Program-made: the position numbers and the translations under genes
Virus record (IMG/VR): IMGVR_UViG_3300028864_000014
Location: 1 to 64,000 of that record
Strand: one strand, 5' to 3'
DNA length: 64,000 bases
Shown: one piece after another, positions 1 to 10,180 of the stretch
How positions within the stretch are numbered: the first letter of the stretch is position 1
Layout of the letters: each line of letters begins with the position of its first letter
Notes under the pieces: model-generated
What the model saw: only the letters and a program-made list of their open reading frames with translations
Database searches by the model: none
What the model was told of the DNA's origin: nothing

Positions 1-240
1 CAGGTAGCTCAGGAACATCAGGTAGTTCTGGTAGCTCAGGCACATCAGGCAGTTCTGGAACATCAGGTAGCTCAGGCACATCAGGTAGCTCAGGCACATC
101 AGGTAGCTCAGGAACATCAGGTAGTTCTGGTAGCTCAGGCACATCAGGCAGTTCTGGAACATCAGGTAGCTCAGGCACATCAGGTAGCTCAGGCACATCA
201 GGAATTCGTGGAACATCAGGTAGCTCAGGAACATCAGGTA
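1..240 (+). repeat. Coding tandem repeat, 9/18-nt units (GGT AGC TCA GGA ACA TCA) encoding (GSSGTS)n
   Basis: Seen directly; Gly every third residue. Confidence 0.95.
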
Positions 241-1010
241 TTAATGGAGCAGATGGATTTGCATCTATAGCAGGAACAACAAATAATGGATTAATAACTT
301 TAAATGAATTATCTCCAAACGTTAGTTCTCATAGTGGATTGACATTTGATGGACGCAATTTAAATATTTGTGGTAATATAGTATTACCTAGCTCATCAGG
401 AACTGGAATATTATTAGGAAATAAAATTCCAACATTTGGATATAGAGACTTAATTGGACAAATAATAACTAGAATTGAAGGATCTGGAACACCAAATAGA
501 GAATCAATAAGAGGTACAAAAATACTTAATTATGCATTTAAAGTTAATGATGATATCGATAATATAACATATCAAATTCCTCATGATTATGTGCCAAATA
601 CTCCTATATTTTTAGATATTCATTGGACTCATAACGGTACATCTATTTCTGGTAATTTTGGAATAAATTACTATATGAATTATTGTAAAGGATATAATCA
701 ATCTGGACAAATTTTTAATTCCGAATTGACAGTTTCTCAATCAATATCAATATCAGGAATTTCATCAAATCCAAGATGGGGACATTTCATTAATGAAATT
801 CAAATAAGCAACAATGGAGGTGATTCATCACATTTAAATACTTCTTTATTAGAAGCAGATGGATTAATAGAATTAGCATTAAGTGTATCAAGTATTCCAA
901 CTATATCTGGAGGTACAACTAATTTACCGTTCATACTATCTGTCGATATTCATTATCAAACAACAGGAGTATTAGGCACAAAAAATGATAACTATCCTTT
1001 TTATACTTAA
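3..1010 (+). CDS. Gly/Ser/Thr-repeat (collagen-like) virion or tail-fibre protein, 5' truncated by the window
   Basis: Open frame from position 3 reads GSSGTSGSSGSSGTS... and continues in frame into the ORF-track entry 339..1010. Confidence 0.75.
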   Translation, partial: GSSGTSGSSGSSGTSGSSGTSGSSGTSGSSGTSGSSGTSGSSGSSGTSGSSGTSGSSGTSGSSGTSGIRGTSGSSGTSGINGADGFASIAGTTNNGLITLNELSPNVSSHSGLTFDGRNLNICGNIVLPSSSGTGILLGNKIPTFGYRDLIGQIITRIEGSGTPNRESIRGTKILNYAFKVNDDIDNITYQIPHDYVPNTPIFLDIHWTHNGTSISGNFGINYYMNYCKGYNQSGQIFNSELTVSQSISISGISSNPRWGHFINEIQISNNGGDSSHLNTSLLEADGLIELALSVSSIPTISGGTTNLPFILSVDIHYQTTGVLGTKNDNYPFYT

Positions 1011-1024
1011 TGAATAAAAACTCT

Positions 1025-1060
1025 AAAAAATGTCAATCTTTTTTAAGATTGACATTTTTT
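1025..1060. terminator. Palindromic intrinsic terminator
   Basis: aaaaaatgtcaatctt-tt-aagattgacatttttt, immediately after the fibre gene. Confidence 0.75.
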
Positions 1061-1087
1061 ATTATATAATATTTAATATATAAAACT

Positions 1088-1917: not shown

Positions 1918-2108
1918 TGCTCACGACCAGGCTCGAACTGGCATCTCATTTTTTAGTTAGGTCACTAAACGCGCTTCCTTTTCACCAACTCAATGATTAC
2001 TTTACTCAGTGCATCCTCAAATATACAGTCATTGAACCGAACAAGCTCAACCACATACCCTAACACTAGCTTCGTTTACTAGCGACTGTCCCTTAGTCTA
2101 ACATGAAC
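1918..2108 (-). ncRNA. 191-nt tRNA-like RNA with about 123-nt insert at the variable-arm position
   Basis: Acceptor GTTCATG/CGTGAGC, D stem GACT/AGTC, stem CTAGT/GCTAG with loop AAACGAA, T arm GCCAG-TTCGAGC-CTGGT. Confidence 0.65.
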
Positions 2109-2118
2109 TTTATAATTG

Positions 2119-2192
2119 TGATCCTGAAGGGATTCAAACCCTTGACCCTCGCCTTAGAAGGGCGATGCTCTATTCAACTGAGCTACAGAACC
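2119..2192 (-). tRNA. tRNA-Arg(TCT), canonical
   Basis: Full cloverleaf, anticodon arm TCGCC-CTTCTAA-GGCGA. Confidence 0.93.
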
Positions 2193-2211: not shown

Positions 2212-2243
2212 TAAAAGTAGTGTTTTATTTTGATACTACCAAA
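2212..2243 (-). promoter_or_regulatory. Bacteroidota-type promoter inside the tRNA array, upstream of Arg(TCT) and the 191-nt RNA
   Basis: Minus strand TTTG-N20-TACTTTTA, one mismatch to TAnnTTTG. Confidence 0.5.
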
Positions 2244-2292
2244 CATTTTACACTAAATATAGATATAATTTTTATAAAAGTTTATTTAATTG

Positions 2293-2376
2293 AGCACAAT
2301 ATCAGACTCGAACTGATGAAATCTTTTCAGATGCTGGGTTACAAAGCCAGAGCAATAGCCACTATGCGAATTGTGC
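2293..2376 (-). tRNA. tRNA-Thr(TGT) with long variable arm
   Basis: GCACAAT/ATTGTGC acceptor, U73, loop TT-TGT-AA (C:C at 31:39), variable arm ATCT-GAAA-AGAT. Confidence 0.8.
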
Positions 2377-2457: not shown

Positions 2458-2467
2458 ATTTTTATTG

Positions 2468-2542
2468 TCGGAATGACAAGATTCGAACTTGCAATAACCT
2501 GGTGTCCAATACCAGTAACCTCTCTCTATGGATCGCATTCCG
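2468..2542 (-). tRNA. tRNA-Pro(TGG)
   Basis: CGGAATG/CATTCCG acceptor, CTGGT-ATTGGAC-ACCAG; atypical D loop and A32. Confidence 0.85.
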
Positions 2543-3106: not shown

Positions 3107-3181
3107 ATTATTAATTGTTTTTATAAAAATCTAAAAATTTTTCAATTTCGTTTTACTTTTCCGAACTATGTTTTTGTTATG

Positions 3182-3268
3182 TCGGGTAGGTGAGATTCGA
3201 ACTCACGATGACTATACGTTCCCTCATGTTCCCAAAACACGTATGCTAACCAACTACACCACTACCCG
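3182..3268 (-). tRNA. tRNA-Pro(TGG) with long variable region
   Basis: CGGGTAG/CTACCCG acceptor, CGTGT-TTTGGGA-ACATG, 18-nt variable region. Confidence 0.85.
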
Positions 3269-3340
3269 ATAATTAAACTATTTTATTTTTTCAAATATCA
3301 AAGAACTCTTTTATATTATTAAATATTACAATAATAATTG

Positions 3341-3399
3341 TCAGGTGAAGAAGAGTCGAACTTCCTTGTGCCTGATCCTGACACTACCACATACACCTG
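3341..3399 (-). ncRNA. D-armless 59-nt tRNA-like element, GAT (Ile) in the central loop
   Basis: CAGGTGT/TCACCTG, 8-nt connector ATGTGGTA, GTGTC-AGGATCA-GGCAC, T arm GGAAG-TTCGACT-CTTCT. Confidence 0.55.
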
Positions 3400-3410
3400 A
3401 TATTTTACTG

Positions 3411-3489
3411 TGACCCAGGAGGGGGTTGAACCCTCATTTTTCATTCCATTATGCACATAGAGTTTAGAAAACTCCGCCATTACAAGGCC
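3411..3489 (-). tRNA. D-armless tRNA-Arg(TCT)-like gene with 23-nt variable insert
   Basis: GGCCTTG/CTGGGTC, connector TAATGGC, GGAGT-TTTCTAA-ACTCT, T arm GAGGG-TTCAACC-CCCTC. Confidence 0.7.
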
Positions 3490-3502: not shown

Positions 3503-3581
3503 TGATCCAGAAGAGACTCGAACTCTCATTTTTCATTCCATTATGCACATAGAATTTAGGAAATTCTGCCACTACAGGACC
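3503..3581 (-). tRNA. D-armless tRNA-Arg(CCT)-like gene with the identical 23-nt variable insert
   Basis: GGTCCTG/CTGGATC, connector TAGTGGC, AGAAT-TTCCTAA-ATTCT, T arm GAGAG-TTCGAGT-CTCTT. Confidence 0.7.
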
Positions 3582-9302: not shown

Positions 9303-10180
9303 TAGTTTTTAAATTTTTCAAACTTAACTGTGAGTTTATTATCAGAAACTTTAATAGGAAATTTAATAGGTGCCTTCAATTCTATTAATTTTGATTCAAA
9401 TGGATTAACAGTATTATTACTTACTAAGTTATTTATTAATGATATATCATTATTTTTAAGTCTATTGGTTATGTATTCAATACACTCTTCATCACTATTT
9501 CTTATTAAGAAATCAAAGTAATCCTGCAAATTATTAGTATTCATAAAATTAGACTTAACATCGTCATAAAAATAAACTTTATCATATGCTTCTTTTTTAA
9601 TAGGCACAAAACGTTTATCCTCAATTGTCAAACCTATCATATGTTCCAATAAAACTTTATTTTTATCATAAATAATTTTATCCATGAATCCAGTGGATCT
9701 AATTGATTCTGATACAAAATATATTTTACTTATTTCTAAACCATACTCTTTTAATTTTTCTCTTAATTTATTTAATAAATTTGCATGTTTTTTCCTATCA
9801 CTTCTAGCTGTCAAAACTCCTATTTCTATGTTTTTACCAATTAGATGCTTAACATTATCTAATAATAATTTGACATCTTTATCATTTAAAATATCTTCAT
9901 TGAAAAATTCACTGTAAGATATTCCTAAATTTGACAATCTAATGTTTCTATTTTTTCTTTGAACCCTCTCTAGCATATCTTTGGATATGCAAAATGTTTC
10001 ACCATTATAATCAACTGGTAATTCATCTTTTGAATAAATACCACTTTTAATTAAAGCGAATTCAATTGGAGAAATCTTTAACATAGGAACAGATGGTTTA
10101 TTTTTATCAATTAACCATATATCGCTTTTTATGTACCAAAGACTATTATCAAGATCAAAAAATGCAATTTCTTTACTCAT
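9299..10180 (-). CDS. HAD-superfamily hydrolase-like protein
   Basis: IAFFDLDNSLW (motif I), VLTAR (motif II), YFYDD (motif IV). Confidence 0.7.
   Translation of the reverse strand: MSKEIAFFDLDNSLWYIKSDIWLIDKNKPSVPMLKISPIEFALIKSGIYSKDELPVDYNGETFCISKDMLERVQRKNRNIRLSNLGISYSEFFNEDILNDKDVKLLLDNVKHLIGKNIEIGVLTARSDRKKHANLLNKLREKLKEYGLEISKIYFVSESIRSTGFMDKIIYDKNKVLLEHMIGLTIEDKRFVPIKKEAYDKVYFYDDVKSNFMNTNNLQDYFDFLIRNSDEECIEYITNRLKNNDISLINNLVSNNTVNPFESKLIELKAPIKFPIKVSDNKLTVKFEKFKNY

What the first reader, a model, noticed from the sequence alone, without database searches (positions are those of the whole stretch)
1918..2108. 191-nt tRNA-like RNA with a structured 123-nt expansion
Seen: complete tRNA frame (acceptor, D stem, ACG-centred loop AAACGAA without U33, T arm). 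The variable position holds about 123 nt closed by GTTAGG/CCTAAC. Inside it TTCAA can pair either with TTGAGC (hairpin) or, as TCAATGA, with TCATTGA further on, so alternative folds are possible. A Bacteroidota-type promoter at 2243-2212 could drive it and Arg(TCT) independently of the attenuator. Established: T4 tRNA clusters encode stable non-tRNA species (RNA C and D) with tRNA-like ends and unknown function. Inference: a tRNA-processed carrier for a novel structured RNA domain.
Basis: partly seen in the sequence, partly recalled or inferred. Interest (0 to 1): 0.62.

Follow-up and report, generated by a model that had tools for sequence, protein, structure and literature searches.

The report
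tRNA-Arg-like gene with giant insert
At the end of a huge peat phage's tRNA gene cluster sits a real tRNA-shaped gene split by a 123-base insert, but it occurs in only one strain-level lineage and nothing shows the insert is a conserved functional RNA domain.

Summary
On the minus strand, 2108..1918 encodes a perfect cloverleaf frame (7/4/5/5 bp, T loop UUCGAGC, D loop with GG, anticodon loop AAACGAA) with 123 nt at the variable position. A strict scan finds this frame plus four true tRNAs in the 235-kb record, and nothing in 30 shuffled genomes.

- Rfam gives no match.
- The insert folds no better than shuffles (z = -1.2).
- No homologue exists in IMG/VR, JGI metagenomes, INPHARED phages or four Mahaphage genomes.
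- Every copy found is 100% identical and comes from one peat population.
- The three nearest relatives (neighbouring protein 85, 74 and 64% identical) lack the element. They carry a mobile homing-endonuclease-like ORF at that site.

Best reading: a tRNA-Arg(ACG)-type gene expanded by a lineage-specific insertion in an endonuclease-driven recombination hotspot. It is probably still cut out like a tRNA but is unlikely to decode, because U33 is missing.

Context keeps a functional reading alive. Related huge phages carry many tRNAs with conserved long variable arms, and two other sporadic frames have 43- and 75-nt inserts.

A separate side finding looks more novel: a conserved tRNA-Arg-like family with a rearranged D arm.

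The parts
1918..2108 (-). Whole 191-nt tRNA-like gene (frame of tRNA-Arg(ACG) type plus insert)
   Evidence: Sequence read. The MFE fold gives the cloverleaf. Strict frame scan: no hits in 30 shuffled genomes.
2102..2108 (-). Acceptor 5' strand GUUCAUG
   Evidence: Pairs 7/7 with 1919-1925; pair probabilities 0.71-1.0.
2084..2098 (-). D arm GACU-AAGGGAC-AGUC, preceded by 3 nt (UUA, 2099-2101) instead of 2
   Evidence: 4/4 bp. The loop has GG followed by A (the A20 position)..
2066..2082 (-). Anticodon arm CUAGU-AAACGAA-GCUAG; anticodon ACG at 2075-2073; A instead of U at position 33 (2076)
   Evidence: 5/5 bp, probability 0.95-0.98. Canonical Arg(ACG) tRNAs of related huge phages have CUACGAA or AUACGAA, all with U33.
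1943..2065 (-). 123-nt insert at the variable position
   Evidence: GC is 38% against 24% for the genome, the 97.8th percentile of 123-nt windows. No Rfam hit. No open frame with a start codon. Fold z = -1.2. No similarity elsewhere.
2059..2064 (-). GUUAGG, 5' strand of the stem closing the insert
   Evidence: Pairs with CCUAAC at 1956-1961 in the MFE; ensemble probability 0.32.
1956..1961 (-). CCUAAC, 3' strand of the closing stem
2031..2051 (-). Hairpin 1 of the insert (GUUGAGCU-UGUUC-GGUUCAAU)
   Evidence: Probability 0.79-0.86.
1989..1996 (-). UCAUUGAG, partner of UUCAAUGA (2029-2036) in the alternative long-range helix
   Evidence: Probability 0.10-0.13; the forced fold is -44.5 against -46.4 kcal/mol.
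1943..1955 (-). 13-nt A-rich unpaired linker UAAAAAAUGAGAU between the insert stem and the T stem
   Evidence: Unpaired in the MFE. Long variable arms of neighbouring tRNAs leave only 4-6 nt here.
1926..1942 (-). T arm GCCAG-UUCGAGC-CUGGU
   Evidence: 5/5 bp with a canonical T loop.
1918..1925 (-). Acceptor 3' strand CGUGAGC plus discriminator A; followed by C-A, as in the other tRNAs of the array checked
2119..2192 (-). Canonical tRNA-Arg(UCU), 10 nt upstream of the element; this gene is swapped between strains
   Evidence: Rfam 65.3 bits. Three different alleles in window, L020 and L004/L021/L027.
2212..2243 (-). Promoter-like TTTG-N20-TACTTTTA (Bacteroidota type) upstream of tRNA-Arg(UCU)
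   Evidence: TTTGG is invariant. The second box is kept, and reads TATATTTG in L027, across five sequences.

Best explanation
The element is a tRNA-Arg(ACG)-type gene, the last unit of the phage's tRNA array. In one lineage it acquired a 123-nt insertion between the anticodon stem and the T stem.

Likely expression and processing (inferred):
- It is probably co-transcribed with tRNA-Arg(UCU) from the conserved promoter-like motif.
- The acceptor/T-arm minihelix, the spacing and the trailer are intact. RNase P and 3' trimming would therefore release it as a tRNA-shaped RNA of about 191 nt.
- It is unlikely to decode. It lacks U33, has an extra nucleotide before the D stem, and leaves a 13-nt floppy linker before the T stem.

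Likely origin of the insert (inferred): a by-product of recombination or repair in a hotspot driven by homing endonucleases, not a conserved functional domain.

Shown: the frame, the insert, its restriction to one population, and the replacement by an endonuclease-like ORF in relatives. Inferred: transcription, processing, loss of decoding, and how the insert arose.
For: - The frame is real and far from chance. The MFE fold reproduces the cloverleaf.
- Removing the insert yields an ARAGORN tRNA-Arg(acg) call, but only in low-threshold mode.
- The position, the 10-nt spacer and the C-A trailer match the neighbouring tRNAs.
- At least 14 contigs from peat samples carry it at 100% identity within a 99.7-100% identical background.
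- Relatives L004/L005, L021 and L027 have the same flanks. Between the leader and ORF110 they carry a different tRNA-Arg(UCU) plus a 292-334 aa ORF.
- That ORF hits PHROG 559 'HNH endonuclease' at 2.3e-6, with sub-threshold NUMOD3 and PD-(D/E)xK hits.
- The ORF is 97.6% identical between genomes whose neighbouring ORF110 is only 85% and 64% identical to the window's, so it is mobile.
- The tRNA-Arg(UCU) next to the element exists in three alleles, with a breakpoint exactly at the element's 5' end.
- The insert shows no Rfam family, no special stability and no relatives.
- Similar lone frames with 75- and 43-nt inserts occur in LR756504 and LR756501. The 75-nt one lies directly after an HNH-like ORF. 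Both are singletons.
- Homing endonucleases living in phage tRNA clusters and converting flanking tRNA genes are established for T4 SegB (PMC2330249, PMC13096335).
Against: - All four stems are perfect, and the insert is GC-rich (38%) in a 24% GC genome. This fits selection for structure, or a very recent origin, better than old junk.
- The insert has somewhat more helix potential than shuffles (p about 0.02).
- In this phage clade long variable arms are conserved and show compensatory changes, so expansions at this position can be functional.
- The element is kept unchanged in a second genomic context, L020.
- No RNA data exist, so transcription and processing are untested.
- No donor for the insert was found.
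Confidence: 0.45

Rival explanations
1. One reading: a functional, non-decoding tRNA-scaffolded RNA. The tRNA frame provides processing and stability, and the 123-nt domain does something else, such as binding a protein or acting as a decoy for a host tRNA-targeting defence.
For: - Perfect frame.
- GC-rich insert.
- Mild excess of helices.
- Retained unchanged in two genomic contexts.
- Clade-wide conserved variable-arm expansions.
- Engineered tRNAs tolerate aptamers on the variable arm (PMC7590224).
- A host defence that cuts a tRNA variable loop is known (PMC13096335).
- T4 tRNA clusters encode stable non-tRNA RNAs (own knowledge).
Against: - No homologue anywhere searched, and it is absent from the nearest relatives.
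- The fold is not better than shuffles.
- No Rfam family.
- No expression data.
Confidence: 0.23
2. Two decayed neighbouring tRNA(-like) genes that only look like one. On this view the 5' half belongs to one gene and the T arm plus 3' acceptor to another. The outer ends pair because paralogous acceptor stems are alike.
For: - 191 nt is about two tRNAs plus a spacer.
- A relaxed scan shows that 5' and 3' parts of different tRNAs in the array can pair perfectly, for example Ala 5' with Val 3'.
- An inner GUUGGUG pairs 6/7 with the 3' acceptor, and the last 72 nt give a weak match (11.4 bits) to the Arg-like model R1.
Against: - No remnant of a first T arm or a second D/anticodon arm is detectable in the insert.
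- The weak R1 match is mostly the T arm.
- The outer acceptor pairs better (7/7) than the inner one.
Confidence: 0.12
3. A working decoding tRNA-Arg with an extreme variable arm, in line with the clade's habit of adding variable arms to tRNAs.
For: - Arg identity positions are present: A after GG in the D loop, C35, G36 and A73 (identity set from own knowledge).
- Class-II-like Gly, Thr, Pro, Lys and other tRNAs are conserved in the clade.
Against: - A33 replaces the near-universal U33, whereas the four canonical Arg(ACG) tRNAs of related huge phages have U33.
- There is an extra nucleotide before the D stem.
- There is a 13-nt unpaired linker before the T stem.
- An AT-rich phage has little need for CGN decoding.
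Confidence: 0.1
4. An intron-containing tRNA gene: the 123 nt are removed after transcription to give a tRNA of about 70 nt.
For: - A related phage (LR756501) has a tRNA with about 45 extra nt inside the anticodon arm.
- The same phage has two RtcB ligase homologues.
Against: - Too short for a group I or II intron, and no Rfam intron hit.
- A position in the variable region is unknown for bacterial or phage introns.
- No splicing endonuclease or RtcB in the 235 kb available. The endonuclease hit in LR756501 is sub-threshold.
- The spliced product would still lack U33.
Confidence: 0.07

Closest known systems
Class II (long-variable-arm) tRNAs, allo-tRNAs and engineered aptamer-tagged tRNAs (PMC5389517, PMC7590224)
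   Same: The extra structured RNA sits between the anticodon stem and the T stem of an otherwise normal cloverleaf. The extra part is closed by a stem.
   Different: Natural variable arms are about 10-25 nt single hairpins with only a few unpaired bases before the T stem. Here the extra part is 123 nt, probably multi-branched, and is followed by a 13-nt linker. U33 is absent.
Stable RNAs C and D (species 1 and 2) of the phage T4 tRNA cluster (own knowledge; not found in the paper library)
   Same: A non-canonical RNA gene inside a phage tRNA cluster. It is presumably cut out by the tRNA processing enzymes, and its function is unknown.
   Different: There is no sequence relation to test against, because Rfam holds no model that matched. 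The T4 RNAs are conserved among T4-like phages, whereas this element is confined to one population.
tRNA genes remodelled next to free-standing homing endonuclease genes (T4 SegB; PMC2330249, PMC13096335)
   Same: The tRNA cluster carries endonuclease-like ORFs in relatives. There is allele swapping of the flanking tRNA and a presence/absence polymorphism at exactly this site.
   Different: No cleavage site or activity is known here. The endonuclease assignment rests on one PHROG hit and sub-threshold Pfam hits. An insertion inside a tRNA as a repair scar is my inference.
tmRNA
   Same: A tRNA-like acceptor/T-arm module enclosing a large internal RNA.
   Different: tmRNA lacks an anticodon arm and carries a tag reading frame and pseudoknots. 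ARAGORN and Rfam find no tmRNA here, and here the anticodon arm is intact.

Membership tests
Canonical decoding tRNA (Rfam RF00005) | Cloverleaf with 7-bp acceptor, D arm, 5-bp anticodon stem, 5-bp T stem and a T loop of UUCRANY type | tested here: met
   7/7, 4/4, 5/5 and 5/5 bp, with T loop UUCGAGC.
Canonical decoding tRNA (Rfam RF00005) | U33 preceding the anticodon in a 7-nt loop | tested here: not met
   The loop is AAACGAA, with A at position 33. Related phages' Arg(ACG) tRNAs have U33.
Canonical decoding tRNA (Rfam RF00005) | Reaches the family's gathering score / is called by a tRNA finder | tested here: not met
   No RF00005 match even at E <= 10. ARAGORN calls it only after in-silico removal of the insert, and only in low-threshold mode.
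Canonical decoding tRNA (Rfam RF00005) | Variable region of 4-5 nt (class I) or about 10-25 nt (class II) | tested here: not met
   123 nt.
tRNA-Arg identity | A20 in the D loop, C35, G/U36, A/G73 (bacterial ArgRS identity set; own knowledge) | tested here: met
   D loop AAGGGAC, anticodon ACG, discriminator A. Charging itself is not testable here.
Group I intron in a tRNA gene | Group I core (P3-P8), more than about 200 nt, inserted in the anticodon loop | tested here: not met
   No Rfam intron match at E <= 10. Only 123 nt, and located in the variable region.
Protein-spliced (archaeal-type) tRNA intron | Splicing endonuclease and ligase available; bulge-helix-bulge at the junctions | tested here: inconclusive
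   No PF01974 or PF01139 hit in the 235-kb record, which CheckV puts at 33% of the genome. LR756501 has RtcB but only a sub-threshold endonuclease hit. The bulge-helix-bulge motif was not examined formally.
tmRNA | tRNA-like domain without an anticodon arm, a tag reading frame, pseudoknots | tested here: not met
   ARAGORN and Rfam find none. The anticodon arm is present.
Conserved structured RNA family (any) | Homologues in other genomes with compensatory changes in the proposed stems | tested here: not met
   Only identical copies exist. None in relatives, IMG/VR, JGI metagenomes, INPHARED or four Mahaphage genomes.
T4-type stable RNA of a tRNA cluster (RNA C/D) | Stable, processed transcript from within the tRNA cluster | not testable with these tools
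   No RNA run holds the sequence. Only the location in the cluster is met.

The most novel reading that the evidence does not exclude
The element is the extreme member of a so far undescribed habit of Mahaphage-like huge phages. These phages build extra RNA modules into the variable region of their own tRNAs, from 12-22 nt conserved arms on Gly, Thr, Pro, Lys, Asn, Gln, Glu, Met and Val tRNAs up to 43, 75 and 123 nt. On this reading the 123-nt module is a functional domain carried and processed on a tRNA scaffold, for example a decoy or binding platform directed against host tRNA-targeting defences.
Probability: 0.2. Interest if true: 0.7.

Novelty: new variant of a known kind. Interest (0 to 1): 0.36.

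Why it matters
If the insert is functional, this would be a natural example of a tRNA used as a processing and stability scaffold for another RNA. Engineers already use that design, but it is not known from phages. It would also tie into the current picture of phage tRNAs as counter-measures to host tRNA nucleases.

If the insert is a by-product, as I think more likely, the element still marks a site where homing endonucleases reshape a huge phage's tRNA set. It also shows that standard tRNA finders miss such genes.

The surrounding array is the more valuable lead. It holds conserved class-II-like tRNAs for amino acids that normally use short variable loops, and a conserved tRNA-Arg-like family with a rearranged D arm.

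Tried and rejected
- **Rfam.** Scans at permissive thresholds on 8 kb and on the 251-nt region gave no match for the element.
- **ARAGORN.** With introns allowed it made no call.
- **BLAST against INPHARED phages.** Only chance matches.
- **Exact and degenerate pattern scans.** Five scans of IMG/VR and one each of JGI metagenomes and GTDB genomes found only the same strain, four chance matches, and one 21-nt match inside a Pyrinomonadaceae protein gene, judged a likely chance match (about 4 exact 19-mers expected in a database of this size).
- **Synteny route.** Using the adjacent ORF110 I found three diverged relatives, and none carries the element.
- **Sequencing runs.** Only peat, soil and lake DNA, no RNA. 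Relatives in soil and lake runs cover parts of the array but not 1944-2091.
- **Origin of the insert.** I looked for remnants of tRNA parts, of the endonuclease ORF, or of anything else in the genome, and found nothing above chance. The shared AAAAAUGAGA 10-mer is common in this AT-rich DNA.
- **Coding.** No open frame with a start codon; the longest stop-to-stop stretch is 53 aa.
- **Small ribozymes.** The hammerhead core motif was checked by eye and is absent. No Rfam ribozyme matched.
- **Orthologous uninterrupted tRNA-Arg(ACG).** Not found in relatives. The Arg(ACG) tRNAs of four Mahaphages are too diverged to tell.
- **Splicing enzymes.** None in the available third of the genome. The weak endonuclease hit in LR756501 lies in an unrelated-looking 276-aa ORF.
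- **Terminator after the element.** None found before 1061-1024.

Full report
**What is there.**
The RNA lies on the minus strand, from 2108 down to 1918. It reads as follows:
- acceptor GUUCAUG
- three linker bases
- D arm GACU-AAGGGAC-AGUC
- G26
- anticodon arm CUAGU-AAACGAA-GCUAG
- 123 nt of extra sequence
- T arm GCCAG-UUCGAGC-CUGGU
- acceptor CGUGAGC
- discriminator A

The unconstrained minimum-free-energy fold reproduces this cloverleaf. It closes the extra sequence with GUUAGG/CCUAAC.

I tested the frame against chance with a strict scan. It required 7/7, 4/4, 5/5 and 5/5 pairs, a TTYRA T loop, G53-C61, and any variable length up to about 380 nt. Over both strands of the 235-kb record it returns four true tRNAs and this element. 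It returns nothing in 30 locally shuffled genomes. The frame is real.

Standard tools miss it. ARAGORN and the Rfam tRNA model give nothing. After in-silico removal of the insert, ARAGORN calls tRNA-Arg(acg), but only in its low-threshold mode.

**Genomic setting.**
The window is the start of a 235-kb IMG/VR virus record that CheckV rates 33% complete. Its GC content is 24%. A 1200-aa protein, annotated as putative tail sheath in a Flavobacterium phage, is 51% identical to that of the 735-kb phage LR756501. It is 39-47% identical to three phages of 634-642 kb. By my knowledge of Al-Shayeb et al. 2020, these are the Mahaphage group predicted to infect Bacteroidota. The DNA occurs in many peat metagenomes.

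The element is the last gene of a minus-strand array of about 14 tRNA or tRNA-like genes.
- It lies 10 nt after tRNA-Arg(UCU).
- It is followed by C-A, as are the neighbours I checked.
- It ends 3 nt from the stop codon of the convergent ORF110.

The whole leader is 82% conserved, so this is only modest support.

**Is the insert a structured domain?**
- No Rfam family matches at E <= 10.
- Its folding energy is ordinary: z = -1.2 for the insert and -0.5 for the whole element.
The hairpin dominates (0.86 against 0.13), and the alternative costs 1.9 kcal/mol.
- The number of 8-bp helices is mildly above shuffles (17 against 6.2, p about 0.02).
- The insert has no plausible open frame.
- Its GC content of 38% is at the 97.8th percentile for this genome.

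The GC content is the one compositional hint of selection or of recent foreign origin.

**Conservation.**
This was the decisive test, and the result is negative. Every copy I could find is 100% identical and sits in a 99.7-100% identical background. These are the IMG/VR contig 3300028772_000096, at least ten JGI and ENA peat contigs, and one further JGI contig.

Through the adjacent ORF110 I reached three diverged relatives, 85, 74 and 64% identical in that protein.
- All share the array and the flanks.
- Between the conserved leader and ORF110 they carry a different 73-nt tRNA-Arg(UCU) followed by a 292-334 aa ORF.
- The element is absent from their whole records.
- It is also absent from relatives in soil and lake runs.

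That ORF matches PHROG 559 'HNH endonuclease' (2.3e-6) and has sub-threshold NUMOD3 and PD-(D/E)xK hits. It is 97.6% identical between two genomes whose ORF110 differs much more. This is the signature of a mobile homing endonuclease gene.

A further strain (L020) keeps ORF110 and the element unchanged. It has a third tRNA-Arg(UCU) allele and an unrelated upstream gene, with the breakpoint at the element's 5' end.

So the site is a recombination hotspot of the kind described for T4 SegB in its tRNA cluster (PMC2330249, PMC13096335).

**Context in related huge phages.**
I fetched the tRNA arrays of LR756501, LR756502, LR745206 and LR756504. Three things stand out.
1. Many tRNAs for Lys, Thr, Gly, Asn, Gln, Glu, Met, Pro and Val carry 12-22 nt variable arms. 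Their hairpins differ in sequence but keep pairing, and their discriminators fit their anticodon. In the window's own clade the Thr(UGU) arm shows a U-A to C-G compensatory change.
2. Two more cloverleaf frames with large inserts at the same position exist.
   - One is 142 nt with a 75-nt insert, in LR756504, directly after an HNH-like ORF and just upstream of tRNA-Arg(ACG).
   - The other is 110 nt with a 43-nt insert, in LR756501.
   - Both are singletons too. About 0.15 such frames are expected by chance in these loci.
3. LR756501 has a tRNA with about 45 extra nt inside the anticodon arm and two RtcB homologues.

The clade therefore tolerates and sometimes conserves expansions at this position. 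The very large ones, however, are sporadic and lineage-specific.

**Verdict.**

The most economical reading is a tRNA-Arg(ACG)-type gene that acquired a lineage-specific insertion in an endonuclease-driven hotspot. It is probably still processed like a tRNA but is unlikely to decode. It has A33, whereas the four related phages' Arg(ACG) tRNAs have U33. It also has an extra base before the D stem and a 13-nt linker before the T stem. I give this 0.45.

The rivals are:
- a functional scaffolded RNA, 0.23
- two fused gene remnants, 0.12 (supported only by an inner 6/7 acceptor and an 11-bit model match)
- a decoding tRNA with a giant arm, 0.10
- an intron, 0.07

Nothing here can be settled without RNA data or diverged copies.

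**Side finding.**
The array holds a family of 77-81 nt tRNA-Arg-like genes without a normal D arm (window 3581-3503 and 3489-3411).
- A covariance model finds 11 members in the window's clade and in three Mahaphage genomes.
- The acceptor, anticodon and T stems are 95% paired, and 9 of 17 pairs show compensatory changes.
- In the distant members, three bases of the linker before the anticodon arm pair with three bases after it, just 5' of a UARYGG motif. The pairs are CCC/GGG, CGA/UCG, CGU/GCG and CAG/CUG.
- This looks like a D stem whose 3' strand and loop have moved behind the anticodon arm.

This deserves its own study.

Noticed in passing
window 3503-3581 (-) and 3411-3489 (-); also L004 10247-10325 and 10061-10139, L021 8412-8490 and 7991-8067, L043 5027-5103, L052 1610-1688, L046 3212-3292, L048 1565-1644, L051 3280-3359: A conserved family of 77-81 nt tRNA-Arg-like genes (anticodons CCU, UCU, UCG; one UAU) with no normal D arm and a variable region of about 21-25 nt (23 nt in the window's copies) containing UARYGG. 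17 canonical pairs are 95% paired, 9 of them with compensatory changes. In distant members, 3 nt before the anticodon arm covary with 3 nt after it. This suggests a D stem whose 3' strand and loop lie behind the anticodon arm.
   Followed up: partly
window 2292-2376, 2801-2887, 2908-2993, 3181-3268 (all -); loci L040-L059: tRNAs for Thr, Gly, Pro (and Lys, Asn, Gln, Glu, Met, Val in four Mahaphage genomes) carry 12-22 nt variable arms like class II tRNAs, with discriminators that fit their anticodon. The Thr(UGU) arm shows AUCU/AGAU against AUCC/GGAU between relatives.
   Followed up: partly
L055 2315-2456 (-) = LR756504 133314-133455; L042 2552-2661 (-) in LR756501: Two more cloverleaf frames with large inserts at the variable position (75 and 43 nt) and odd anticodon loops (CUGUCUC, UUCAGCU). 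The first lies directly after an HNH-like ORF. Both have no homologues in the other genomes.
   Followed up: partly
L042 5597-5714 (-) = LR756501 207096-207213: A 118-nt tRNA (Rfam 52.6 bits) with 56 nt where the inner 11 nt of the anticodon arm should be, so it looks intron-like. The same genome has two RtcB homologues at 535680-536843 and 342463-343182.
   Followed up: no
window about 3340-3400 (-); L004 about 9990-10049: A tRNA-like mini-gene of about 60 nt (acceptor UCAGGUG/CACCUGA, a 4-bp T stem with loop UUCGACU, one central hairpin). It is conserved in L004 with a G-C to A-U change in the T stem. No tRNA finder calls it.
   Followed up: no
window 2119-2192 (-); L020 2202-2274; L004 7348-7420: tRNA-Arg(UCU) exists in three unrelated alleles at the same site in otherwise close genomes. 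The window's allele resembles common bacterial and phage Arg(UCU) tRNAs.
   Followed up: partly
L004 6335-7300, 8155-8634, 8803-9780; L021 5337-6341, 6725-7486; L027 3421-4299, 5100-6248: Relatives' tRNA arrays are interspersed with zinc-finger/endonuclease-like ORFs that the window's array lacks. One is 97.6% identical between genomes that are otherwise 64-85% alike.
   Followed up: partly
window 1-310 (ORF 3-1010, +): A collagen-triple-helix repeat protein (Pfam 3.8e-14). All strain differences in the first 7 kb cluster in its repeats, and the repeat matches 40 places in LR756501.
   Followed up: no
window 2467-2542 (-): tRNA-Pro(UGG) with an unusual D arm, called by ARAGORN only in low-threshold mode and missed by Rfam, yet conserved in L004 and L027.
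   Followed up: no
L044 (LR756501 about 690585-690737): Two adjacent tRNAs with anticodon CUA (amber-reading), labelled Pyl(cta) by ARAGORN. This hints at TAG recoding or suppression in that phage.
   Followed up: no
window 1024-1061: A perfect 17-bp palindromic hairpin flanked by A and T runs, between two plus-strand ORFs. It is a likely bidirectional terminator and the first terminator-like site downstream of the tRNA array on the minus strand.
   Followed up: no
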